Shown here piece by piece: positions 4,463-46,898 of a DNA stretch of 64,000 nt. The notes beneath the pieces were generated by a model. The model saw only the letters and a program-made list of their open reading frames with translations, made no database searches and had not been told where the DNA came from. Origin of the DNA: Neoechinorhynchus agilis. Taxonomy: Eukaryota; Animalia; Acanthocephala. The stretch covers positions 14,052,784 through 14,116,783 of the forward strand of contig CM121341.1 in assembly GCA_051530055.1 (NCBI GenBank). Reading direction: 5' to 3'. A program made the position numbers and the translations under genes. Each line of letters opens with the position of its first letter. Position 1 is the stretch's first letter.

Positions 4463-5185
4463 TATATTGATCTAAAAAGGAAAATTTCAAAAATTAATTG
4501 ATTAGTAAATATATGCTGAGGGGTTCGCAATTAAAAATAGACAAGTTACCATAAAAAAATTTGGAGTTCCAGAAATCCCAGAAATCTCTCAAAAAATTAG
4601 TGCTATTTCCGTTCCACACAAGTTCTCACATTTTGATACTTTTTGTCCGATTATTGAAAATTTATGCTATGTGAGCATCTTTTCAAGATTTGCTAAATTT
4701 GTACTGTATTAGTTATTTTATGTATACATTTGAGAAAATAATATAAAAGGAAATCCGGTAACGAATGTTATGGAACAGCTTGGCAAAGAAATTTGAAACA
4801 TGATGATTAAAAATTCCACAAAATAAAAATTCAGATACTGTTGACATACAACAAAACAATTCCAAGCCTCATTTAACAAATAACGATTCTGCTTCACAAG
4901 AAGAACGTGTAAAAGAAGGCTGGAATCTGCAATTGTAATTTCAACCTCCGAATAGTCCAGACCTAAATAGTTTGGATCTTGGTTTTTTAATTCAATACAA
5001 GGACTGCAACATGAAATTGTAACTAAAATACTGATGGTTTAATCAGTAGAAACAGTTTTCCAACAATTGCATTGGAAATTATCAAACGGAAATAACTGCT
5101 ATTAGATTACTCGTATAAATAAAGAAAAACATCGAAAAGAAAGTCGACTTCTGGTAAATTAAAAATGTAATGTCGGAGATGTGGA

Positions 5186-5247
5186 TGATAACCCAGCCCT
5201 GAGGAAACTCGGTGCCGGCCCCAAGCCCGAATAAATGGGGAGGGTTG
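5186..5247 (+). ncRNA. Twister ribozyme motif (type P1 with P3) at the RTE 5' end
   Basis: TAA-CCCA-GC-[P3 with GAAA tetraloop]-TG-CCGG-CCCCAAGC-CCGA-ATAAA-TGGG-AGGG matches the twister core (compare GCCGGUCCCAAGCCCGGAUAAAA...GAGGG). P2, T1 and T2 pairings are intact; one P4 mismatch and a weak P1. Confidence 0.8.
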
Positions 5248-8117
5248 ATGTCAGGAATTGCATCCGACCGCAAAAAACCGTACACCAATAAAACCAAAAA
5301 TGAGCAGTCTAACAAACACACAAACAAGGATAAGGGCGTACTTTGTATGCGATGCGCAGAGAACTCGTCCGATCTCTGTGAATAAATTATCAAATGGACA
5401 AAGACCTTAACGCGAACAAAAACTGAGAATTGAATCTTTAAACGCCGGAACAATGAAGGGTAAATCGATGGAAATAGTGCATATGATGAAGAGAAGGAGG
5501 ATTGAATGTCTATGTTAAGGGGCTGAAATGGAAAGGAGCCGAACCACGCCATCTTGGAGACGGCTTCAAACTATTTTATAATGGTTCATCTTCTGATCGA
5601 AATGGAGTTGGAATTTTCTTGAGTGATAAGCATGCAGATGGATTCATAGAAGTCTATAGGAAAAGTGATAGGACAATGTGGATGCGGATAGACCTTGGAG
5701 GGCAATGCCGGGACTTTCGAAGCAGGACAAAGACCAGTTTTGGCTAGATCTATATGATGTGGTCGATGAAAACAAGGAAAAAAAATGTATAATATTTGGA
5801 GATCTCAACGGTCATGTAGGCGCGGAAAACTCGAGCTGGTGTCATGCACACGGTGGAAGAGTCTTTGGAATCCGAAATGCAGAGGGAAAAGCCATTTTTA
5901 ACTTTGCGTTGGCAAATAGACTTCGAAAAAGAAGAACGACAACTTGTGACTTATAGCAGCGGCGGGAGAAAAACGCAAATCGATTATATCCTCTATTCAC
6001 AAAGTGAAAAACGTAAAAACTATACCTGGAGAGACGTGCGCTTCGGAACACCGTTTACTGCGTATAAACCTGGAGATCAAGAACATTAAACGGCCCAAAT
6101 AAAGGATGCTTAGTAAAATCGAATGGTGGCGACTTGATCAAACTCTATATCGTCAGGAATTCACGAAGCAGGTTATTAGCATTCTAAATCACGACATTGA
6201 GGATACAAACAGATTGTTTATTAAATCAGCAGAGGAAATTTGTAAAATAGGCAGAGAAACCCTTGGAATAACCCCAGGTAGAAAAGGACCGAAACAAGAA
6301 ACATAGTGGTGAAACGACGAGGTTCAAAGGACGATAGCGGACAAAAAGAGCGCGAAAAAGAAAATGAATGCAGATCTTTATAGGGGGAATAAGGAAATAT
6401 ATAAGGCGAGAAAAAGAGCCAAGAAAACTGTGGCGATAGAGAAGCAGGAGGTAAATTCAATCTTCTATTCAAAACTGCAAGAAAACAAAACAATGTAATA
6501 TGTGTTCAAAGTGACAAATATCAAAGATCAGGGATCGAAGGACATTACCAGGGTAAAGCAAATTAAGGACAAGGAAGGGAACATTTTGAGAGAAAAAGAA
6601 GTTAAGAAAGGCGGAGAGAATACTTCGATCAACTGCTAAACAGTAAGAATGGAGCAGAAAGAGTGGAAGAGCAGGAACCTAACGAAGGATTAGTCAGCGC
6701 AATATCAGAGGTCGAAGTTAAAACAGCACTTTCCAAGATGAAAAACGGAATAGCTACGGGCCCAGACGAAATATCCATAGAAGTCTGGAAAGCGCTTGAA
6801 GTTGATGCTTTTCCACTATTAAGAAATCTCTTCCGACGAATACTTACTACTGAAAAGATGCCAGACGAATGGGGCAGAGCACACTGGTACCGATATACAA
6901 AAAGAGAGGAGATGCCAGAGTTTGTTCAAGCTATCGAGGAATCAAATTGTTGAGCCACACGATGAAGCTATACAAAAGGAACGCCTGCGAAGCAAAATGT
7001 CAATATCAGAGGAGCAGAGAGGATTTATGCCCGGCAGAAGTAGTACCGAAGCTGAATTCGCGTTACGTCATTTATATGAGAAATGCCTTGAAAAACGAAA
7101 GGAAATACACAGCGTGATCATCGATCTCGAAAAAGCCTATGACACTGTAACTAGAAAACTGGTAATGGAACTGTCTTAGAAGAAAACTCTGTCCCGAGAC
7201 TTATATCACAGCGATTCATAACATGTACAGGCAGAGCAAATGATAGCTTCTCGGTGAACGCAGGATTGCATCAAGGTTCAGCTTTGATCCCTTATTTGTT
7301 TGTAGTCACTATGGATGAAATTAGCAAAGTATCAGTAAAGGTCCGTCATGGAACATGCTTTTCGCCGACGACATCGTCCTCTCCAGCTATAATTCCCAGG
7401 ATCTCAACAATGACCTATAGAAATGGAGGGAAGCTCTAGAAAGTCAAGGTCTAAACATTTCCCCGGGGAGAAATCAGTCTACGTGGGAACGGAAAGCATT
7501 TTCCTTCAAGAGACACCGCTGCAGAAATTCGACAAATTCATGTACCTTGGCTCTCTATAGTGTCGATGCAAAACGATATCACCGCCGAGATTTCATCGAG
7601 AATAAATAGCGAATGGATGAAGTGAAAAAGCCTAACTGGGATCTTGCGTGATAGCAAAGTGCCTGTGGAGTTGAAAGGTAGAGCCTTCAAGATGGCAATC
7701 AGACCAGCCATGTTATATGGGGTGGAGATATTGAACACCACTGCCAATCACATCAAGCGAATGCAGGGGAACCGAAATGGACATGATTAGGTGGATGTGT
7801 GGGGTGACCAGGCAAGAAATGATCCCAAATAATGCGGTCTGGGGCTCAGCGAAGGTGGATGACGTGAAGGAAGCAATCGCGAAACGGAGGATCAAATGGA
7901 GCGATATGGTGAAAGGTGAAGAGCCGAATGGATTTATTCGAAAAGTTGAGCAAATGGAAATCGAAGGGAATGTGGAATGCCGAGAAAACAATGGAAAGAT
8001 TGTGTGGCTGAGGGCCGACGTTTGAAGGAAACGGGTTGTAGGAGCGTGTAAAGTCTTAGGATTGGAAGATTTTGTGCAACCCCGAGAAGGGAAAAATATG
8101 AAGAAAGTTGTTGTTGT
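5187..8117 (+). mobile_element. Full-length but decayed RTE-clade non-LTR retrotransposon (APE + RT)
   Basis: APE (GLKWKG...FKLFYNG...RNGVGIFL, GDLNGHVG, TQIDYIL) and RT (ATGPDEI, YRGIKLL, GFMPGRS, IDLEKAYD, GLHQGSAL) fragments in shifted frames. 16-bp TSD tgtcggagatgtggat at 5171-5186 and 8118-8133. (GTT)n tail. Confidence 0.92.
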
Positions 8118-8319
8118 TGTCGGAGATGTGGATTATAAAATTGGTTTAAAAAATATCGAATTGTGAAATGACTACTATAAAATCGATAAGGAACTTTTTC
8201 TGACTCGTTTTTTTGTTAGCATTTTTTACGTACCCAAGCTTGTTAGAAAGTCTAAACCCTTTTCAAGAAGACATTAATTATGAAACTCGGTCAAGAATAG
8301 TTATTGATTTATTGTTCTC

Positions 8320-8468
8320 AATATTTCGTCGGTCTCGTCGGACTTCTTCAGGTTGTTAAAGTATTGAGAAATAATAACGAAATTTCAATGCGAAAAAGCT
8401 ATAACTTTCTTTATCATTTCTCAATACATTAACAACCTGAAGGAGTCCGACAAGACGGACGAAATATT
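8320..8468. repeat. Fold-back element: two inverted Penelope-type pLTR fragments, each with a hammerhead-like core
   Basis: Arms 8320-8378 and 8411-8468. Each reads CTGAAG(A/G)A-GTCC...(G/C)GAC-GAAATATT. Confidence 0.75.
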
Positions 8469-8805
8469 AAAAATAAATTAATATCTATTTTTCTCATCAC
8501 AACGGAACGCATATATAAATGAGCACCTTCTTTACAATAACAATAATTCTGTTGCAATAAAAAAATCAGAGATCTACCAAAAAATTACGCTCAGGGCAAA
8601 ATTGTTTTTTTATGACTTAAAATTTAAAGCAATTTATTAGTTCCTATATTTCAGCACTGCCGAATTATCGGACCTAATAAATTACATCAAAAATTTCCGC
8701 CATATAAAAACATGAATAATTCAATTTTTAAACAAAAGCTTTTTTCCATAAATAATATTCACCTGAGGAATTCATTCTAAACCCAATATTACAGACTTAT
8801 ACGTT

Positions 8806-19100: not shown

Positions 19101-22100
19101 TCCGAAACGGGGGAGGCATATCGAACTTCATCCGCGCTTCTCTCCTTTACCATTGCTCTTCACCCCACTTTTTCATCTCCGACGATCTTGAATGGCTTCA
19201 CATCCAACTTCATCTCCCCGTCCGCAATGGCCAACGTGAGATCTCTATCGCTTGCCTCTATCGCCCTCTTTCCTCAAACATCCCCAACGCACTTCAACAA
19301 ACAGACCAACTATTTACTGACCTACTTTCCATTTCAGCAGATCACTTTATCATATTGGGCGATTTTAACAAACTGACGATCCCGCCGTCGCTCTCTCATC
19401 TCTCCCAACTCGTTACTTTCCCTACACGCTTCTCCTCCCGCCTTGATAAAATTTTCTGAAACATCAGGCAATATTCGTGCACTACCAAACTTCCCCCGAT
19501 CGCCTCGTCTGACCATTGTTCAATCCTTCCCTCCCCCACATCACCCCAAAAACGTTCCTTTTCCGACCACTACGTTGTCTGGGATAAACGTGATCATCAT
19601 ACCCGCGCCTTTGCTGCATGTGTCAATTATCTTATCACGCAAAACCGCTCTACCATCTTTGGTCGATTGCAATGGGTTCTTTGTTAAATCTAATAGAATC
19701 TGCGATGAAGGCCTCGTTTCCCCGCAAAACAATACGAATCTCGAACCGCGACCCTCCATGGTTCTCGCCTTTTCTAAAAACCCTTGAAATCCAGGTCACC
19801 AAAGCTTTCCGGTCAGGAATCCTGCTTTTTCCTCCCTCCACTACACTGACAAAACGCATCCGTATAGCCCGCAAATTATTTTTCTCATCTCGTCTCTCTT
19901 GTTCTGACGCCCTCCTCTGCATTTACGATACGCTTGTGCGCAGCTTAGATTCCAGTCCAGCATCAACCGGTCGTCTTGTGCAACTCGATATTTCCAGGGC
20001 GTTCGAGTCGGTAGATCACTCCCTTATCCTCCAATCATGTGCTTCCTTTGGCCTCTCAACTTGGCAACTCGCTTGGATTTCCTCTTTCCTCTCCAACCGC
20101 GAACAATATATCCAATGTGGAGCTTCATGTTCTCCCTCTCTGCCCATATTTAAAGGGGTCCCCCAAGGTGCCGTACGTTCTCCTCTCCTCTTTGACATTT
20201 TTCCAAATGACCTCCATCCCCTCACTCCCCCTACCAAATATTTTCGCTATGCAGATGACCTCACAGTCATTACTATCGCATCTGCCTCTCTCCCCTCTCC
20301 ACAACCATGGGCGAGCTCAACCAACTCATTTCCTCGCTCTCCACCCTAAACCTCTCCCTAAATTTATCCAAATATTTTGAGCTTGTCCCCCACATTTCCA
20401 AACGCAATCTTATCCCCGCGCCTCTCCCTCTCCCCATCCAACGCTCCTCTTCTCTCCGAATACTGAGCCTGATTTTACAAGAAAACCTTAAATGGGATGC
20501 CCACATTTCTTTTACACTCCCTAAAGCAAACCCTCGTCTTTACCTTCTTAAACTCGTCCGGCGTCTCCGCGTATCTTTTAGACACCTTGCTTACTTTTAT
20601 CTTTCTACCATCCTTCTTATCCTTACATACGCTTTCCCCACTTTCCTCCCCTCTCCGTCAATGCTCTCAATTCCCTTGAAACCTTCCACAAGAGAGCAGC
20701 TAGAATATGCGGGACTTCACTCCCTCCTCTCGACGCCCACCTCCACTCCATTTTCTCCATCAACCCCTTCACAATTTTCTTTCATCTCTAAATACTCTTC
20801 TTTCGTAAACACCCGTAAACCCAACCTTTTAATCCCCCCCTCGCCCGTACCACCCTCTACGAAAAATCTTTCTTCCCTCAAGCCCAATCTTTCCTTAATA
20901 ACCGGAGAACAAGGCAAGACTCCTAATCTGTCATCTTCTTTACAAAGCACCCGATCCCACGTCAACACCCCTTCAAAAACAGTCCCAACTCCCTTGCCTT
21001 CAACATCCGTCATCCATACACCGTTTAGCAAAGATAGATGCTGACAAGTGTGTGGATCGTGCATTTTTCATATAAATAAAACGTGTTTATAAAGGCGAAT
21101 TGGTTTCCTAGGAATAGCTGTAGTCATGCAAGAAGAGATTATATTAGTTAGAGAAAGCATAGCCTCCGAAGGGTTCGGGTGAAAAATAGATTTTCTGTTT
21201 GAAGAGAGATTACGCGAGACCTATTTGGTAAATGCGAAAATGTATTGATCTCTCTTATCCCAGACCGTAAAGGGGCTGACCGTACACGTTGAGGAGAAGC
21301 GGAGGGAGAGAGGATTATTGCGTAATGGTCTGAGGATGAGAAAGATTTAATCGAGATGTGAGTTGTGGCGGGTAGGAAATTTTACTAACTGGACGAAGTC
21401 AAGGAGAGATGGTGATGTTGGAAGATTATTGAAATCACCAGGAATGATTCGATGTTCAAGACCAAGAGAGTGAAGATTTGCTATCATTGCATCAATCTCC
21501 TGTGATACCAGACCGAATGAAAATGGAGCTCCACCTCCTGCGCGTTCGTCTCTGTAAGAGTGGAAATAAGTGTACTCAGGAATTAAGGCGATGTAGGAAT
21601 TGGAGGAGTGCAACCACGTTTACACAATGACCAAACGCGAAAGATGATCTATTTTAGATAACAGACTTCTTATGTTAGTTAAAAGAATGTAGGGAAATGG
21701 TTGTTTGAAAGAGCTTGAAGGTGATGTATTTTGTGGGAGTTGGTTGGTGGAAGAGTTCGATGGATAAGTTTCTGAGCGTTTTTAGAGTGAGTAGTAATTT
21801 TTGATTCTGCCAACGTACAGTAGGGATTTTCGAAGGTGCCCAAAAATTTACTTGTTTTGCTGATTATAAATTATTGGAAGGGGGAGAAGACGGTTGTACA
21901 TAGGCGAATGATGGATGGAGTTCACAGTTTGAAGTGAGCTATCTGGGTATATTCGGTATGGTAGGGAGGAATTGACAAGTAAGAAGTGCTTTTGAACGGA
22001 GGATGCGGTGTTTCGTAGATGGAAAGTGATTTCAGTTGACGAGGACGAGAGTTATTAGAGTTTTTGTCGGGGATGCGCTGGAAGGAGACCGGAAAAAGAA

Positions 22101-22380
22101 AGGGAAAGAAGGATTGGGGAAAAAAATTGTCGACATGTGGTGTTTCTGAAGGTCTAATTTGCATAATGCTGTGATTTCGTGGATACCTGAGAGAAGATAT
22201 TATGTGTAGGCCCATAGTGGGATGATATATCATGATATTGTTGGTTGCTGTAAGTCTGTTGCGGTGTTTGGGCGGTAACTGTGAGTGGTAGAGGGGGAAG
22301 GATGTATTGGAATTAAAGGTTTCGTGGGAGAAGCTATTTTCGTAGATAATCAAAGATGGTGGAAAGTTTTAAGAGATTTT
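16190..22380 (-). mobile_element. LINE family A (APE-RT), interrupted by a family B insertion at about 17940-21090
   Basis: APE at 21100-21700 (GDFNNLP...FPTRHNSHLD). Linker IPRKPIRL at about 21090 resumes as SRDPH*MSLFLK at about 17938. RT at 16857-17577 (LPISIL, LDLSKAFDSVD, YADD). Confidence 0.8.
17940..21090 (+). mobile_element. LINE family B (PHD-like ORF1 + APE-RT; CR1/L2-group-like), decayed
   Basis: ORF1 with CKRC...CDVDDC...FICGFC. APE YSNIRSL, ITETWL, GDFN, FPTR...LDKIF. RT LDISRAFESVDH, GVPQG, YADD. AATAAA near 21075. Confidence 0.85.
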
Positions 22381-22419
22381 GACTTGTGATGAAGATAATC
22401 CCGATTAAAAATCATTTTA

Positions 22420-22775
22420 TTGTACTGAAATATTTCGCGAAGAAACCTCGCCTTATCAATTATCTAAAAAAGTATTTGGTTATTGCTATTTGTCGATAGG
22501 CGAAAATAAACGAAATTAAGATTTTATTGGATATTTCGATCCATTATCTCGGATCTTCTTCAGCGATTCTCAATTCAAGCGTCACGTTACATGCGGTGGG
22601 AGTTGCATCCTTAATTTGAAATCAGGCTTATTGCCCTCGAACGTTTCGAACCTATTTATATATAAGGATTCGATGACAATACGTTCGAAACGCCGACCAT
22701 TGCGAACTAGTGTTGTAGCGGCACTAAAATCAATAGTGTGCCCTGTGTTTTGCATGGGCCACCACTGCGGAACTA
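22420..22775 (-). mobile_element. Penelope-like element 3' end (GIY-YIG C-terminus + pLTR)
   Basis: QNTGHTIDFSAATTL...RIVIESLYI...FEGNKPDFKLR, similar to the ORF at 60153-60524. Confidence 0.8.
22526..22575 (-). ncRNA. Minimal hammerhead ribozyme motif (Penelope pLTR type)
   Basis: CTGAAGA-A-GATCC-gagataat-GGATC-GAA-ATAT-C. Stem I is interrupted. Confidence 0.65.
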
Positions 22776-22779
22776 ATAT

Positions 22780-25700
22780 CCAACTAATACCAATGTTTTC
22801 GCAACCACCTAGTGTTGCGACGGAGGATGGCATACGGCAATCCAACTCACTGAAAATTAGGGTACCTCCGGACATACGGAGGCACCTTCTCAGTGATCGT
22901 TCAGAGGGTGACACACGGCCACCCACAAAGCTTCAAACTTCATCTTCAATAGGTGATACACACAAAATTATATACTTCGATCGGCCCGTTAAAAAGGACG
23001 ATTACGTAACCAAAATATCTGCGATTCCAATCGCATCAAAGGAAGCCACCTGGGGATGTTTCCTCAAACCATGGCTGAACACAAAGAAGGATAGTATACT
23101 AAGAATCAGATCAACTTCATTCTGGAATGGTACTTTAAAAATTGTCTTCGTCAACAAAACTGAAATGGACGACTTCGAATCCTTTGTGAAGGGTCGGCAC
23201 GACGAAAAAAATTTCAACATTCAATCCTTCCGAAACAAAGCAACTTTCATTGCTCACAACATTGGGAATTTATCTTCGCCTGATAAGATTCAAGACTTTG
23301 AGAAACAATTTCACCTAAAGTTTAAATTTTTCTTCAAATCCAGGAAGACGGGAAAGGCAATTCCAGTGGGAATAGTTGAAACCGACATGGATCAAATGGA
23401 AACTCTTTGCTCCCGCAAATGGATATTCCAGTGTATGGAAATCACATTCACAAAAAATTCAAATACAGAATCAAATCTCGTGTACCCACATTGCAACATA
23501 TGCCTACAGTGGGGACACTGGAATCAAAACTGTCCCAATAGAATCCCAAAAATGTTGCTTCTGTGCTGAGGATCACCACATGTCCTCGTGCACAAATAAA
23601 ACAAGCAAATGTGCCAATTATGGTGGATCGCACCGAAGTTATTATAAAGGATGTTCATGCTTTAAAGCTTACGTGGAGGCCTGGAAAACGGACTCCGAAT
23701 TAAAAAGAAATTCGAACAATATAAAGATCGCCCCATCAACACCCTCCTATCATACGAGTAAGATTACGGTTTCGAATAACGCCGGACCTCCATCCCAACC
23801 CGTCTGTAATGAAGAGGAGATATGCCAAAGAATCTTTGACAAAGTCCTACATGAAGTTACTCATCGGATATCAACACTTTTCAACAGCCTGCAGAAACAA
23901 ATCGCTCAACAAATACAAAATTTACTCGCCATCACGATTCCGAATGCGATTATAAATCCGACACCGAATAACAATAACCTAGCAGCACCAGATTCGCATA
24001 AGGTCAGCAGTAACCCACCTGCAACGGCCAATCCATACAGGGGAAAGAGACAACCGACTAAAGCTAGTAAAGCAGGTGGAAAAAACTTTCGTCGCTCGAT
24101 AAATGAAGGAAATAACAAATTCATCACTAGCGACTCTGACGCTGTGATGGATGTTGTAGAATAACGATGAGTTGGTCCTCGCCAACGCCGCTTAACCTGC
24201 ACTGCTTACAATGGAATTCGGGTGGAGCCGCGGCTCTAAACAGGTTTGATATTTTTACTTACATCACAGAAGATGTTATCTGTATTCAAGAGGCCAAAAG
24301 GCTGCAGTAGGATCCTATGTTTTACCACAAGCATTTTTTCTAAAATACGATGTTTTCCCAACATTTCCGTTGAATCATTACTGTAGCGGTCTCTTAACAA
24401 TCTTTAAAAACATCTTTCAGCGTCGCTGATCCAAAATTACATTAGTGAAAATCTTTCCTATGCCATTTTTAAAATTCACGCGAACGGAAAGGCTGATTGG
24501 CAACATTTACGTACGTCCTAAATTTATGCATAAGAAAGATACGAAGGACATCATTTGTAACCTTTTAAGCTTGGGCAACATCTTTTTATTTGGTGATTTG
24601 AACGACCCTACAGGAAAATGGACGAAAACTATAGCAAATAGAGAGGGCTCTCATGTATTTTTAACACCCACCCAACCCACATTTCACAGGATATCGAGTA
24701 ATGTTCATTCTTGGTTGGATGGATGCTATGTCCCATCCAACCGACAGGAAAGCATTACAGTTGCAAAACAATGCGATTTGTCGGAAGTATGCTATCATGA
24801 TCTGATAACATGGTACTTATCCAGCGACAAGTCTTTAAGCCGCAGATTCCGGTTTTCGCCCATTAACGTAGCTTTTTTCAATTTCGCCATTAAACGCTCC
24901 CTTCACGAATTTCTGAATCTCCAGGACTGGAATTCTTTACTTTTTAATTTCTCGAACAAATTTCTATCTATCCCCAATCATTTTTCAAGAGGAGTAGTTA
25001 CCTCCAACTATCTTAGATACTGTGCATCCCAAATTATAAAAGCTAATACACATCAGGATGCTCCTATGCAAAAACTTTGGTCAAATAAATACTGGGCTTC
25101 TGCAACGAGAGCTATCTATGACTCCCTATGTCAAAATTTTAGGTATCGCTGCCTCATTTCATTCGATTTCACCGCAGCATATGACAACATTGATCTGCAA
25201 TTTTTAATGCACTACATGGTCCTTCTCAACTTCCCACAGGATATTGTAGTTCGTATCAGAGATATTCTAGCCACCAAATAATTTTACCTCGAGGACGACG
25301 AGGATCATAAAATCTTCTATCCTAAAAAAGGTTTACCGCAGGGCTCCCCTCTATCCCCTATTTTATTTCTAATAGCTATGCAATTTATAGCCAATTTTTA
25401 TAAGGACGGTGTTAACATTTTTATATACGCTGACGATATAAGTGCAGTTTTATTTACCAATAACCCCTGGGAATTACCTATATTACTGAAGGAATTGTTA
25501 GCTTTTTTCAATAGAAATGCAGCACATATGGGCATCGGGCTGAACCTTAACAAAGCCAATATTATGGATGTAGCTGGCAGCAATTATGTTAATAAGAAAC
25601 TTAATTTAATAATTAAAAATCAATTTTTACGTATTTTATATCGAACTAACAACGTTGGTAATTTACATTTTAATAAAATTAAAATTTTAGGTTACAATTT

Positions 25701-25850
25701 GAACGCAAAATTGAATGAAAATTTAGAAATGAAACATTTTAAAAGAATTTTAAAAACTTCCAAACTTTACTGTACAAGAGCGTTGAGGCTGCAACTGAGC
25801 TACGTTGAGACGGGCAGTCTTGTTTCGAACAGGCGATGAAGCTTTGTTTT
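22780..25850 (+). mobile_element. Two-ORF LINE (family C): gag-like ORF1 with CCHC knuckles, ORF2 APE-RT; decayed
   Basis: ORF1 CNICLQWGHWNQNC and CFCAEDHHMSSC, stop at 24164. ORF2 from 24167: LQWNSGG...ICIQE, GDLN, SFDFTAAYD, GLPQGSPLSPILF, YADD. Frameshifts plus an in-frame TAA at 25279. Confidence 0.85.
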
Positions 25851-26899
25851 ACTCTTATCTCTTTTGTAATTGTCGAGAGGAGAAATAGGCTGAGCGTTGA
25901 CGATGGGCTAAGCGTTGTTAAAAAGAGCTAGAGAATAAACGTGATTTGTTTCATTAATTTATCAAGAAATGTTCTTGTGCTTTCATTTTTCGCTTAATGG
26001 CTATTATCGCAAAATTAGAATAATGTTCATTTTATTCAGGTCAATCGTTTAGCATGTCAATTACAGTAGCTCTTTTAGCAGCGATTCTATGGAGGAAAAT
26101 CTGCGCTTAAAAATTAGTATAAAATAAGTGATTGATGGATTTCTTAAAACTCGGCATTGTATTCACTTTCTCTTAGACTACTCACGTGTCGCGCTGATTC
26201 CACACGCGAGAATCCTTTATGCTTTCTCGTGGCAGTTCGTCCTATTTTTAGGGTTTCTCGCAAAATTATTTTAGCTGTTAAACTTCAATAATTTTTTCTA
26301 AAGTGGCTCGTATTTTCACGAAAACTTATTGATTTAACGATTGCTCCTGTAATAACTACCAGCATCTAAAATTTTAGAATCTTGTCCGAGTTGTCTTCGG
26401 AAAATCGTCGTTCCTCTCAATATTCAACAAAAAAATAATACAATAAATACATCGTAATTATATTTTAACCCCCGATTCTCTTACTTTTTAAGAGGATGGA
26501 CAAGATAACGCTTCTAAGAAGTGCGCATTCTACTTTAAGTCTCATTGGTTGCAAGATTATGCTTACAATGACTCGTTTTTCGAGGTAAATAACATATTTC
26601 AGTGCGATTTGTCGAGGCTGTACCTAGCAAAAATACAGCTCTAGCTACACATTTTTTGAGCTGCGCAAATGAAAGTTGAGCTTGAAGATAAGCATATAGA
26701 TTTGGTTTTTCAATCAATCATCCCTAAGCGTGCTTTTTATCGATTTTTTTAAAACGTTTGAGATATTCGCAACTGGATTGCACGCTCGCAGTAACTTTCT
26801 AGCTCAATGTTTACCTTAATTTATCTTGTTTCAATTCTGCTAATTAATTTAATTATAAAATCATCTCATGCTTTTAAATGCTACCCTTGATTTTGTGCA

Positions 26900-29830
26900 T
26901 TATTTATTTATTTTTACAATAATTTATTTTTTTATTAAAAAACTCAATCGTACTTCACCGTCCCCAAGACGCTCGCTGCGTTTCCTCGCTGGATAGCCAA
27001 GGATATGTTCTGCACTAGGAACGAACGAGCCCTCCTGTCATTGGTCGAGTTGATCAGTCGATGCCCCAGTTCGAAAACAAAACTCCTCGCCGCACGTCCG
27101 AAAGCTCCTAAGGTTTCCACTGCGAAGGGGAAAAAATGATGAGAATTCGTACAATCAGCGTATTTTGCAACCTTACGGAGCTCAGCTGCTGATGTGGCTC
27201 CCCCAGCCCCAGAGGATGCATCTCGCAGATTGCTGGCTGCAAGGGAGTCGACGCATGTTGCGTCCCATAGGAGACATCTCCCCCTGCTCCAAGGAAAAAC
27301 GGTAACTCAGTCCGGCCTACGCCCATCGATCCTGCAGATGTTGCTAGGCTCGAGGATATTCGGAGAGTTAGCCGTTTTCAAAGCGCGGCTCAGCAATGCG
27401 TTTATTTCGGCGTGTCTAGCAAAACGGCCACTTGAGCGTTTACAGGCTAATCCGTGCCTGCCCGAGGGGTCAACTTCCGTCCCGCATCGGCAGGTGTGAG
27501 GGATACAAACCGGGAGCCCGAGCCCCAGAGACACTGCGATTCTGAGAGCCTCGCCGTCTAATCTCGAACCGAGATTTGCTGATGGTACAGCTTTCAACAA
27601 GGCACCGGACTGTTTGCAGGAAACTGCAGTTAATCGCGTTCTATCCACGTCGGAGAGCGAGTCAAAAAGTGAGGTGTGAACACGCTCCACTAACGGAATG
27701 TCCCACGATTTCTGTTTTTCCGGGAGGTCTGGAATCTTGTCGAGGTTAGACAGACACATCCAAAGATGAAGAGCGGGCTCCAGGCTGATGTCCTCCTCAA
27801 AATTATGTCTCAAAATCAATCTGGAAAGGCGCTTGGACCTACTAAGAGACGATGGAAAGGCTGGAAGCGCAATGGCTGAGCTGGCACGAATACCGATCCC
27901 TCCGCAGCTTGTGGGCAAAGATGCCTGGGTCCAGCCAGTGTCGGGGAGCATAATATTAAGGATCTTACATAGACCATCCCTTAAAGAACCATCAATCTCT
28001 TTCAATTCGGGCTGACATTGAAAGGAAGGGGTTGACCGCAGTTTATGGAGGATGCGTGGAATGAAGATGCAATTTTTTAAAAGGAAGAGAGCATCGTGAG
28101 GGGAAAGTTCAGAGGCCCTTGAACAGATGAGATCAATGGAAGATCTGATTTTCCTGATCTCGGCCTGCATATTCTCCTCGAGAACGCAGCTTCCCAGCAG
28201 TTCTAAGCTGGACTTGGTGATAAGTCGGATATTAGGTGCGGCCTTTTCAAACTCTCTCAAAATTTGTGCGCGTTCCTCGTCCCCACAATTCAAAACCAAA
28301 ATTTCGCACTTGCTTGGGTTCAGTTTGAGGCCAATTTTTTACATTCTTCTAAAAGAACCGTTAAATCTTGTAGGACTTCAGACGGGGAACCTCCTAGAGT
28401 AGCGTCATCCAGATACCAGGCGTTGCATGGTGATCGAAGAGATTGCGCCAGATTGTTTGTCGTCAGAGCAAAACCTAAAGGCCCCAGAGGGTCCCCTTGC
28501 TGCACACCCGATTGAAACCAGATCAGTTCATTATTATATACGAGCGGGGTGTGAGAGCAATATGCTAACTGAAAGTAGGGGAGAAGCTCTGGAATAGTGT
28601 TTCCGACTGTTGAGATTAAGATGCCTCGATCGATAGTGTTGAAGGCATTTGCGAAATCGCACTTCAGGATTACCTGAACGCCCCTACCAGAATTAATAAA
28701 AGAACGCAGCGCGTGGACTATAGCCTCTGCTCCACAAGGAGAGCAACATCCGAGCTGGACGGGCCTAAGGATCTGGCCTGCTTTTTCCGCGACCCTTTTT
28801 GACAGAATCTTTCCGGTGAGACGGCGAAGGGTAGTTCCGATTGCTATGGGACGAATCCCACCGTCCTTCTTATTAAGGGCAGTGGTAATTGTGTCCCCCG
28901 CAAAAGTATCCGTTGATGAGAGAAGGCGCACGGCTCCACGGATGTCGCCGTCGGACAACTTGGCCGATACGCGTTCTCCTAAGCGTCTAGATGAAAAACG
29001 ACGAGAACCTTCAGATTTCGTCGAAAAGGATGTTGGATCCTCGGCAGATTTGAGCACAGCGAGGAAATTATCAGGGAAGTTGGCGACTCTGGACTTGACA
29101 ATTGATGTCAAGGATTCCTCTGAGGACTCACCGGCGAATAATACGAGTCGAGGGAAGGCGAACAAACGCATCCGGGATATTGCGCTATTATTACAGACAC
29201 ATTCATTTAAAAGGTCCGCAAATGCGGAACCTACTTGATACCGGGCGCCTTTAGGAATTCGTTTGAGGACGTGATTGGGAAGGACACGAAAAAGTTTCGC
29301 AATTAAGGGAAGATTTTGTGAATCAAAGTCAAGTTCACAATTTGGTAGGGGAAGAGCTGATATCTTCAGGAGACATGCCCGACCCTTCGCAGCGTGAAGA
29401 ACGGGGACCGTGAACATGGAGGAGACCTAATTTCGTGACTCTGACTACTTTTGAGCAGATCTTACACAAACCTGTGGAAACCTTGGAGGCGGACGTAGCA
29501 TCGATGCCGGAAGAAGTAGGTTCGCAAAAAGACATTCTCCAGTACGAGCGTCAGTGAGTTTGTGTGTGTCCTTTGGATTGTTTTGGGTTGAATAATTGCT
29601 TGTAAGTTTTGCTTTCGGAAATTGGGTAATAGATTGTCTTGTTTGCAAGTGTTTACGAGGTTGGAGTTTCGTTCAGTTGTTTGCAAGTGTTAACTTTTTT
29701 GAAAGAGCCGCGGTTTAGTATTTGGACTTGCTTGTGGCTTGTAAGTTCGCTTTTAGGTGACTGATGAGGTGAGATTTCCTTGTATGCAAGTTTTTTCATG
29801 TAAAATCAGCGATTATTACCGTTGAGCTAG
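26900..29830 (-). mobile_element. Near full-length CRE-like non-LTR element (zinc finger + RT + RLE), decayed
   Basis: ATG at 29535 with CKICSK...HVHG..RC.GS. RT GGIRPIAIG, DFANAFN, GVQQGDPLGP, YLDD. RLE CRCG...GRHGLAC...RH...EP...DGRRPD...AIQRGNAASV, stop at 26944. AATAAA and A-rich tail. Confidence 0.9.
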
Positions 29831-46070: not shown

Positions 46071-46898
46071 TCAATCACCGTATGAGAACGTATGATTCAC
46101 GATTACTAACGAAGGTTTATCTACAAGAACTCTAAACCTTTTATCAAGATTATCTTTGAATCCATTCGCAGTGCTGACCATTCCAACTCCAAATTCCAAC
46201 TCCGATTTATGCATTTCGTATTTCAATCCACGTGAAGAAACAACCGTTTTGCCGAGCATTGGTACAACACCACAATAATTTCCACATTGGTGACAATCAC
46301 TCGCATCGACTTCATTTTCGTCACCGTCTTTTATCATGAACACAATATCAGTGTCTGTAAGAAAGTAAATCGGGCACGAAAATTCAAAAGAATGAAGATG
46401 AAGAGCATGAACAATGTTTAAGGTATGATCGAACCTCTTCGCAAGAAGGCCGATGATATAAACGCAATTCAAATCATTAGATAGCACCTTATCGCTTTTT
46501 AGCAGCATCAATGTCTTTTCGAAATCTGTATAATTTTGGTTTTCAAGAGGAATTACCGTTCGTTTGTTATACCCATTCCTCAATTGAATAACAAACGAGT
46601 TTATCTCGACGCCTTGGTCAATGAAAAATGCCTTTGCCTCATCTGAAATTGAGTCCATGTCTCCACAAATCATTGTGGGAATACGTGGTTTCTCAAGACG
46701 AGCACCATTACGAATCTCTTCACAAAGATCATTAGCAGCTCCGTCAACACAAAGCCGAACCGATGATCGATTCCAAATATATTTGCTGTGGAAATCAGTT
46801 GGGCGAAATTGACCAACTCGATTGAGGAGAATCGATGCCATTTTGTTTGGAGCTGATTTAGCAAATCCCATGAACGGTTTGAAATGTTTTGTAAGCAT
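46071..46898 (-). CDS. TPK1: Thiamine pyrophosphokinase
   Basis: VRLCVDGAAN, GDMDSI, QNYTDFEK, GLLAKRFDH, CGVVPM, SRGLKY, VSTAN motifs in one ORF. The start codon could be a nearby downstream ATG. Confidence 0.92.
   Translation of the reverse strand: MLTKHFKPFMGFAKSAPNKMASILLNRVGQFRPTDFHSKYIWNRSSVRLCVDGAANDLCEEIRNGARLEKPRIPTMICGDMDSISDEAKAFFIDQGVEINSFVIQLRNGYNKRTVIPLENQNYTDFEKTLMLLKSDKVLSNDLNCVYIIGLLAKRFDHTLNIVHALHLHSFEFSCPIYFLTDTDIVFMIKDGDENEVDASDCHQCGNYCGVVPMLGKTVVSSRGLKYEMHKSELEFGVGMVSTANGFKDNLDKRFRVLVDKPSLVIVNHTFSYGD

What the first reader, a model, noticed from the sequence alone, without database searches (positions are those of the whole stretch)
5186..5247. Twister ribozyme whose cleavage site coincides with the RTE 5' boundary
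Seen: P2 (CCCA 5192-5195 / TGGG 5236-5239), T2 (GC 5196-5197 / GC 5225-5226), P3 with a GAAA tetraloop, P4 with one C-A mismatch (5215/5230) and T1 (CCC/GGG 5241-5243). The predicted U|A cut at 5189/5190 is 3 nt inside the TSD boundary (5186), so the 5' strand of P1 comes partly from the target site and is weak here. Established: twister variants process 5' ends of RTE-clade elements in Schistosoma. Inference: this host lineage uses the same mechanism, and activity of each copy depends on the flank.
Basis: partly seen in the sequence, partly recalled or inferred. Interest (0 to 1): 0.75.

Follow-up and report, generated by a model that had tools for sequence, protein, structure and literature searches.

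The report
Twister-headed dead RTE retrotransposon copy
A decayed RTE-type jumping gene in the thorny-headed worm Neoechinorhynchus agilis begins at the exact base where its built-in self-cutting "twister" RNA would cut, a 5'-end trimming mechanism already published for blood-fluke elements, so this is a clean example in another animal phylum and not a new principle.

Summary
Window 5185-5248 matches Rfam twister-P1 (45.8 bits, E 2.4e-9, below the 67.2-bit gathering score), with all catalytic positions, P2, P3, P4 and both pseudoknots present.

It heads a 2.9-kb, frame-broken endonuclease/reverse-transcriptase element (5190-8117). The element ends in (GTT)4 and is flanked by a 16-21-bp target-site duplication.

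Two corrections:
- The duplication runs to 5189 (one mismatch at 5187), so the U5189|A5190 cut is exactly the element boundary, not 3 nt inside it.
- The T1 GGG is at 5242-5244.

Genome-wide there are at least 51 copies of this twister type. In 22 of 23 independent insertions similarity starts at AA (+1), and the base before it is random.

The mechanism is known: Perere-3 T-variants (Liu 2021) and "truncated twisters in RTE" (de la Peña 2020). This scan has already reported the same thing on other DNA of this genome.

Pairing of P1 with the flank is at chance level. The nominal P1 3' strand (UUGG) is instead the base of a covarying, element-encoded 3' hairpin followed by GUAAAA. That hairpin is shared with intact RTE-like elements in metagenomes and appears undescribed in the papers read here.

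The parts
5171..5189 (+). 5' copy of the target-site duplication. The unambiguous core is 5174-5189. It also supplies the nominal P1 5' strand (5185-5188) and the -1 base U5189.
   Evidence: (D3: 20/21 identity with 8118-8138)
5190..5244 (+). Twister ribozyme core. A5190 and A5191 form L1; the cut is 5' of A5190. P2 is 5192-5195 with 5236-5239. T2 is 5196-5197 with 5225-5226. P3 is 5198-5214 with a GAAA loop. P4 is 5215-5217 with 5228-5230 (C.A mismatch). L4 is 5218-5227 (U to C at 5219). T1 is 5220-5222 with 5242-5244. G5240 is the general base.
   Evidence: (RF03160, 45.8 bits)
5245..5248 (+). UUGA (family consensus UUGG), the nominal 3' strand of P1. Its G5247 starts the 3' hairpin.
   Evidence: (P1 54% paired, chance level)
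5247..5269 (+). Element-encoded 3' hairpin. Pairs: G5247-C5269, U5249-A5267, C5252-G5266, G5254-C5265, G5255-C5264, A5256-U5263. A5248.C5268 is mismatched in this copy. The stem is irregular and thermodynamically weak in this class.
   Evidence: covariation; the single-sequence fold gives a partly different register
5270..5275 (+). GCAAAA, a decayed copy of the conserved GUAAAA box that follows the hairpin. It marks the end of the 86-nt conserved head (5190-5275).
5190..8117 (+). RTE-like non-LTR retrotransposon copy, 2.93 kb. The single EN-RT reading frame is broken into many pieces: endonuclease about 5502-6090, reverse transcriptase about 6660-8025.
   Evidence: (weak Exo_endo_phos_2 and RVT_1)
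8107..8118 (+). (GTT)4 microsatellite 3' tail. Its last bases overlap the start of the TSD.
8118..8136 (+). 3' copy of the target-site duplication, followed by AA at 8137-8138.

Best explanation
Window 5190-8117 is a dead copy of an RTE-like non-LTR retrotransposon of Neoechinorhynchus agilis whose RNA began with a twister self-cleaving ribozyme.

Proposed cycle, following the Perere-3 work:
1. In the active ancestors the element was transcribed together with upstream sequence.
2. The twister fold cut between the last flank base and A(+1), releasing an RNA that starts 5'-AACCCAGCC.
3. The single EN-RT protein then copied that RNA to its very first base at a new nicked target.
4. This produced a (GTT)n-tailed insertion with a 16-21-bp target-site duplication abutting the cut site.

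Everything upstream of the scissile bond is replaced at each jump, so the ribozyme must work without an encoded P1 5' strand. Here the bases that would be the P1 3' strand instead open a conserved hairpin inside the element, followed by GUAAAA. This suggests a self-contained ribozyme that cleaves at its own 5' end, as HDV-like ribozymes do.

Shown here: the motif, the boundary, the TSD, the family-wide clustering of 5' ends, selective conservation of the 86-nt head, and covariation of the hairpin.

Inferred: actual cleavage, co-transcription, and the role of the hairpin.

This particular copy is a fossil. Its coding frame is shattered, and the motif carries two substitutions away from the family consensus (U5219C and G5230A), both of kinds that are mildly tolerated in published assays.
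For: - Rfam twister-P1 match over the full model: 45.8 bits, E 2.4e-9.
- 61 such matches in the genome, up to 60.4 bits. 51 copies of the type-1 core against 0 in the control.
- Similarity among copies starts at window 5189/5190.
- Mean pairwise identity among 23 independent insertions: 0.29-0.30 in the flank, 0.74-0.89 over +1 to +64, 0.72 over +65 to +85, and 0.34-0.48 beyond.
- EN/RT homologues lie on the same strand about 300 nt downstream in 21 of 28 loci, although the proteins are only 35-45% identical between subfamilies.
- The TSD abuts the cut site in the window and in L051; plausibly also in L037 and L053.
- 90 metagenome contigs carry the same core. 19 have same-strand EN/RT downstream, and three have intact single ORFs of 969-998 aa; APE and RVT_1 both score in two of them and RVT_1 alone in the third, L090.
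- P2 covaries: 8 pair combinations, and CCCA/UGGG against CUCC/GGAG between the two N. agilis types.
- Published mechanism: PMC8501958. PMC7761336 states that truncated, active twisters are conserved at the 5' end of RTE-superfamily elements.
Against: - No cleavage or transcript data were examined.
- The score is below Rfam's gathering threshold in all 61 copies.
- Within the N. agilis family there is no significant covariation in the twister helices; the copies decay neutrally.
- No intact element was seen in this genome. The longest open frame around the RT is 379 aa, so the system may be extinct here.
- Clear TSDs were found for only a few of 17 older copies.
- Clade assignment to RTE rests on architecture, not on a tree with reference sequences.
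Confidence: 0.88

Rival explanations
1. Flank-dependent model. The TSD supplies the P1 5' strand, which must pair with the embedded UUGG. Each new copy is therefore active or dead according to its insertion site.
For: Liu et al. report that P1 composition changes T-variant cleavage rates in vitro. L001, whose flank happens to give 3 P1 pairs, has the best Rfam score.
Against: - P1 pairing across copies is 54%, about the 50% expected from base composition.
- The -1 base is random.
- CHiTA found that P1 imperfections and all four -1 bases are tolerated, and that P1 is dispensable.
- The GG of UUGG pairs with element-internal CC in a covarying hairpin, which excludes a 4-bp P1 while the hairpin is formed.
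Confidence: 0.15
2. The conserved 86-nt head is primarily an internal promoter, a translation signal or a protein-binding signal. The uniform 5' ends then reflect transcription initiation at A(+1), and the twister resemblance is vestigial.
For: The head is conserved beyond the ribozyme, through +65 to +85. Many LINEs have internal promoters. Liu 2021 and Ruminski-type work link 5' ribozyme folds to translation.
Against: - The match covers the full twister model with every catalytic base in dozens of copies, with E down to 6e-12.
- P2 covaries across elements.
- The homologous fluke motif cleaves in vitro and in vivo.
- The roles are not mutually exclusive.
Confidence: 0.05
3. The motif is a chance match to the twister model in a GC-rich stretch.
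For: The score is under the gathering threshold. The single-sequence fold energy is unremarkable (z = -0.22).
Against: E is 2.4e-9. The motif is multi-copy, with 0 hits in reversed-pattern controls. Its position relative to EN/RT is fixed.
Confidence: 0.01

Closest known systems
T-variant twister ribozymes at the 5' end of Perere-3 (RTE clade), Schistosoma mansoni (Liu et al. 2021, PMC8501958)
   Same: - Twister core with AA after the cut, located at the element's 5' end.
- The TSD abuts the cut site.
- The P1 5' strand comes from the target.
- Identical L4 (GUCCCAAGC), GAGGG and UUGG.
- Single EN-RT ORF element.
- The second N. agilis type even shares the fluke P2 (CUCC/GGAG).
   Different: - The host is an acanthocephalan.
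- The window's type has P2 CCCA/UGGG and a short GNRA-capped P3.
- All copies seen here are decayed.
- Flank pairing is at chance.
- An element-encoded 3' hairpin that uses the UUGG bases is documented here and is not mentioned in that paper.
'Truncated but catalytically competent' twisters at the 5' end of RTE-superfamily retrotransposons (remark in de la Peña et al. 2020, PMC7761336, citing work in preparation)
   Same: Exactly this arrangement, stated as general for the superfamily.
   Different: Only a one-sentence statement is available. No sequences, hosts or structure were available for comparison.
HDV-like ribozymes at the 5' end of R2, RTE, Baggins and L1Tc elements
   Same: Same job: co-transcript 5' processing, with the cut at the ribozyme's own 5' end and no upstream sequence requirement. 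Possibly also a role in translation.
   Different: Unrelated fold (nested double pseudoknot), not a twister.
Rfam RF03160 twister-P1
   Same: Full-length alignment; all conserved nucleotides; P2, P4, T1 and T2 present.
   Different: P1 is not encoded. All 61 genomic matches score below the gathering threshold, so standard annotation misses them.

Membership tests
Twister ribozyme (Rfam RF03160, type P1) | Covariance-model score at or above the curated gathering score (67.2 bits) | tested here: not met
   45.8 bits, E 2.4e-9. The best genomic copy scores 60.4 bits. The shortfall is largely the missing P1.
Twister ribozyme (Rfam RF03160, type P1) | Conserved catalytic and core nucleotides: A1 and A2 after the cut, the general-base G of GAGGG, and the L4 sequence CCCAAGC | tested here: met
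   A5190, A5191, G5240 and 5220-5226 are all present. One L4 substitution, U5219C, relative to the family consensus.
Twister ribozyme (Rfam RF03160, type P1) | Helices P2 and P4 and pseudoknots T1 and T2 can form and are maintained by compensatory change | tested here: met
   84.7% of cells are paired, against 26-50% when partners are slid. P2 shows 8 Watson-Crick combinations in related elements and CCCA/UGGG against CUCC/GGAG within the genome. Within the family alone, covariation is not significant.
Twister ribozyme (Rfam RF03160, type P1) | Closing helix P1 between the 5' and 3' ends | tested here: not met
   54% paired, which is chance. The 5' strand is target DNA. Published data say P1 is dispensable.
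Twister ribozyme (Rfam RF03160, type P1) | Site-specific self-cleavage | not testable with these tools
   Needs an in vitro transcription and cleavage assay.
RTE clade of non-LTR retrotransposons | Single ORF with an N-terminal AP endonuclease and a reverse transcriptase, with no large ORF1 | tested here: inconclusive
   The window copy is broken and gives only weak Exo_endo_phos_2 and RVT_1 hits. Metagenome elements with the same head have one ORF of 969-998 aa; APE and RVT_1 both score in L085 and L130, while L090 scores RVT_1 only.
RTE clade of non-LTR retrotransposons | Short element (about 3 kb) with a short simple-repeat 3' tail and a TSD | tested here: met
   2.93 kb between TSD copies, (GTT)4 tail, 16-21-bp TSD.
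RTE clade of non-LTR retrotransposons | RT groups with reference RTE sequences in a phylogeny | not tested
   No reference RTE sequences were at hand. The best protein hits (42-57% identity) are unnamed EN/RT proteins of fishes, insects and plants.
Perere-3-type ribozyme 5' processing | TSD directly adjacent to the cut site, and family 5' ends clustered at A(+1) | tested here: met
Perere-3-type ribozyme 5' processing | Co-transcription with upstream DNA and cleavage in vivo | not testable with these tools
   Needs RNA data.

The most novel reading that the evidence does not exclude
Retrotransposon-borne twisters may be a distinct architectural type.

The bases annotated as the P1 3' strand (UUGG) do not pair with upstream RNA. 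Instead they open an element-encoded 3' hairpin, followed by a conserved GUAAAA. The hairpin takes the place of P1, or switches with it after cleavage. That would make the ribozyme cut at its own extreme 5' end regardless of the insertion site, giving an HDV-like topology in a twister fold.

The hairpin itself is well supported by covariation in three sequence classes, from N. agilis and from unknown metagenomic hosts. Its function is conjecture, as is the claim that it is undescribed. In the window's own class it is an irregular, weak stem, and an alternative pairing of that box with the P4/T1 strands cannot be excluded.
Probability: 0.35. Interest if true: 0.55.

Novelty: new member of a known kind. 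Interest (0 to 1): 0.3.

Why it matters
- **Wider host range.** It extends the twister/RTE 5'-processing system from blood flukes to Acanthocephala. Together with the metagenome contigs, this supports the view that the module is an old, widely carried feature of a lineage of RTE-like elements.
- **Missed by standard annotation.** Gathering-threshold Rfam annotation misses every one of these ribozymes, because P1 is not encoded.
- **A testable alternative.** The covarying 3' hairpin plus GUAAAA gives a concrete alternative to the published idea that the insertion site tunes ribozyme activity.

Tried and rejected
- **Default Rfam scan of the window.** Nothing was reported; the motif is sub-threshold.
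- **Single-strand fold of 5175-5260.** Uninformative (z = -0.22), because the fold is pseudoknotted.
- **Within-family covariation of the twister helices.** Not significant, because the copies are neutrally decaying relatives.
- **RNAalifold on the N. agilis heads.** It proposed pairing the downstream box with the P4/T1 strands. This was neither confirmed nor excluded.
- **RNAalifold on the mixed hairpin alignment.** Class-wise counts were used instead.
- **TSD search in 20 further copies.** Only L051 was clear. L037 and L053 are plausible. L038 sits in a tandem repeat and is uninformative.
- **Pfam on the ORF pieces after a type-2 twister (L025).** Silent. The APE reading there is by eye only.
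- **An early guess of a flatworm host**, prompted by the hammerhead notes. Rejected once a paralogue named the host.

Full report
**The motif**

The stretch 5185-5248 reads AUGA-U|AA-CCCA-GC-[P3 with GAAA loop]-CCG-GCCCCAAGC-CGA-AUAAA-UGGG-GAGGG-UUGA.

An E-value-thresholded Rfam scan of 5100-5350 gives one hit. It is twister-P1 (RF03160) at 5185-5248 on the plus strand, covering model positions 1-68 at 45.8 bits and E 2.4e-9. Non-standard pairs are flagged only in P1, at the base of P3 and at one P4 pair. The default gathering-score scan of the whole window finds nothing, because the family cut-off is 67.2 bits.

Against the family consensus this copy has two substitutions: U5219C in L4 and G5230A, which gives the C.A pair in P4. 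A minimum-energy fold of the single strand is uninformative (z = -0.22), as expected for a pseudoknotted ribozyme.

**The element and its ends**

Downstream ORF fragments on the plus strand carry endonuclease and reverse-transcriptase motifs, with weak Exo_endo_phos_2 and RVT_1 hits. They are scattered over all three frames, so the copy is dead.

A 21-nt direct repeat, 5171-5191 against 8118-8138 and 20/21 identical, brackets the element. The 3' copy is preceded by (GTT)4 at 8107-8118.

With that mismatch allowed, the duplication ends at U5189. AA 5190-5191 is ambiguous, because the empty site also continued with A's. The element is therefore 5190-8117 (2.93 kb), and the predicted scissile bond is exactly its 5' junction.

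**Family census**

The window lies at G000:C1:14052784-14116783 of a 46.2-Mb assembly. Searching that genome with RF03160 gives 61 matches, the best at 60.4 bits and none over the cut-off.

| Pattern searched | Matches | Reversed control |
|---|---|---|
| Shared core, exact (GGUCCCAAGCCCGG, 3-12 nt, GAGGGUUG) | 21 | 0 |
| 33-nt core of the window's type, up to 3 mismatches | 51 | 0 |
| Second, P3-less type (AACUCC... with P2 CUCC/GGAG) | 69 | 0 |

After orienting 30 loci, every copy shares sequence from AACCCAGCC onward and nothing before it.

Among 23 independent insertions the mean pairwise identity is as follows:

| Region (relative to A+1) | Mean pairwise identity |
|---|---|
| Flank | 0.29-0.30 |
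| +1 to +64 | 0.74-0.89 |
| +65 to +85 | 0.72 |
| Beyond +85 | 0.34-0.48 |

The base at -1 is T in 8 copies, G in 7, C in 5 and A in 3. One copy (L009/L045) starts with a single A.

Endonuclease and RT homologues follow on the same strand, about 300 nt downstream, in 21 of 28 loci. The subfamilies are only 35-45% identical at the protein level and share no detectable DNA similarity beyond the 86-nt head. The head has therefore been kept by selection in the lineages that were active, while the individual copies decay.

A clear TSD abutting AA, again after a (GTT)n tail, was also found for L051. Plausible ones were found for L037 and L053. No intact ORF was seen: the longest open frame around the RT is 379 aa.

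**Host**

A thiamin pyrophosphokinase ORF in the window (46071-46898, minus strand) has one database relative. It is a 44%-identical protein of Neoechinorhynchus agilis whose contig length, 16,375,937 bp, equals that of G000:C2. The genome is therefore almost certainly N. agilis, of the phylum Acanthocephala. No paper in the library combines twister, ribozyme and Acanthocephala.

**What is already known**

- Liu et al. 2021 showed that T-variant twisters sit at the 5' end of the RTE-clade element Perere-3 in S. mansoni. These cleave in vitro and in reporter constructs, are co-transcribed with the element, and have TSDs right next to the cut site. The TSD is said to form the P1 5' strand and so to modulate activity.
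- De la Peña's 2020 review already states that truncated but active twisters are conserved at the 5' end of RTE-superfamily elements.
- The 2024 CHiTA study found that P1 imperfections, P1 absence and any base at -1 are tolerated. It also found that an A.C mismatch in P4, or one mismatch in the longer pseudoknot, costs only part of the activity.

This scan has already reported the same arrangement on other pieces of this genome, with the same conclusion. I reached mine before reading those notes.

**Beyond this genome**

One exact-pattern scan of metagenome contigs returned 90 contigs.

- In 19 of them an EN/RT reading frame follows on the same strand, 90-700 nt after the ribozyme (mostly 100-210 nt). 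Only one contig, L097, showed any additional hit that was not same-strand and downstream.
- L085, L130 and L090 carry intact single ORFs of 969-998 aa. Pfam scores APE plus RVT_1 in L085 and L130, and RVT_1 only in L090. They are about 35-41% identical to the N. agilis RT.
- Their 5' similarity again begins at AA.
- P2 takes eight different Watson-Crick combinations. The exact complement of the 3' strand occurs in the A-NNNN-GC context in 31 of 63 sequences, against 2 for a control.

**The 3' hairpin**

In all these sequences GAGGG-UU is followed by a stem that begins with the GG of "UUGG" and ends just before a conserved GUAAAA.

On a MAFFT alignment of 60 distinct tails, the three basal pairs behave as follows:

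| Measure | Observed | Controls |
|---|---|---|
| Cells paired | 91% | 77% shuffled (0 of 500 shuffles as high); 38-67% when partners are slid |
| Covariation score | 0.448 | 0.187 shuffled (0 of 500 as high) |

The third pair occurs as GC 15, CG 13, UA 12, UG 6 and AU 3.

Inner pairs covary within each of three classes, for example GC/AU, UA/CG and CG/UA. Classes A and B fold convincingly on their own, with z from -1.9 to -4.1.

The window's class is an irregular stem with conserved bulges and an AGGGCA loop, and it is weak by energy rules. In the window it is 5247-5269, followed by GCAAAA. An alternative pairing of this box with the P4/T1 strands was suggested by RNAalifold and is not excluded.

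Pairing of UUGG with the flank is only 54%, which is chance. I therefore conclude that P1 is not a maintained feature of these ribozymes, and that the flank-dependence idea is unsupported. Whether the hairpin stands in for P1, forms after cleavage, or serves translation or protein binding is inference only. Neither Liu 2021 nor the CHiTA paper mentions it. The latter knows only P0, P3 and P5 as auxiliary stems.

**Limits**

- No experiment or RNA data were used.
- RTE membership rests on architecture and on unnamed homologues, not on a reference tree.

**Verdict**

The main interpretation is right, but the mechanism is already published. The flank-dependence inference is not supported. The 3' hairpin is the one point that may be new.

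Noticed in passing
G000:C2:3484215-3488379 (minus strand); also G000:C1:4587627-4589667 and 4572830-4573979: Tandem arrays whose units carry the 5' half of the second (P3-less) twister type. One has about 29 or more units at a period of about 145-150 bp. The others have 220-320-bp spacing. They were seen only as pattern hits; the DNA could not be fetched.
   Followed up: partly
L023 and L025 (G000:C2:7368298-7368352 and C2:11595050-11595104): A second, 55-nt twister type without P3. Its P2 is CUCC/GGAG, as in S. mansoni, and it again starts at AA with unrelated flanks (42-43 bits). L025 has endonuclease-like ORF pieces 700-1000 nt downstream by eye, but Pfam is silent.
   Followed up: partly
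L033:3380-3460 and L034:1420-1500 (G000:C34 and C2:13878000-13885000): Two copies 82-83% identical to the window element, in which the P3-P4-L4 part of the twister is missing but the downstream box and GUAAAA remain. Their shared sequence extends about 12-20 nt upstream of the AA. This is what one would expect if 5' trimming was lost, but the two may simply be duplicates of each other.
   Followed up: no
window 6527-8573 versus L031 (G000:C1:14045000-14051500, minus strand): An inverted local duplication, 95-99% identical. It contains the 3' two-thirds of the element together with its TSD and 450 nt of flank, so it arose by segmental duplication and not by retrotransposition. Similar multi-copy flanks occur around L016/L018/L019/L020/L030 and L007/L008.
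   Followed up: no
window 8289-8540: A 74-nt-arm inverted repeat (8312-8385 with 8403-8476, 86% complementary) just beyond the element. Related short repeats lie upstream of other twister copies, for example in L006 and L015. It looks like an unrelated MITE-like repeat.
   Followed up: no
window 46071-46898 (minus strand): An intronless 275-aa thiamin pyrophosphokinase ORF (TPK_catalytic plus TPK_B1_binding). Its only database relative is a 44%-identical N. agilis paralogue on another chromosome-scale contig.
   Followed up: partly
window 19618-29417: Several further reverse-transcriptase ORF fragments on both strands (RVT_1 hits at 19618-20349, 24445-25281 and 28320-29417). These are other retroelements, not headed by a twister.
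   Followed up: no
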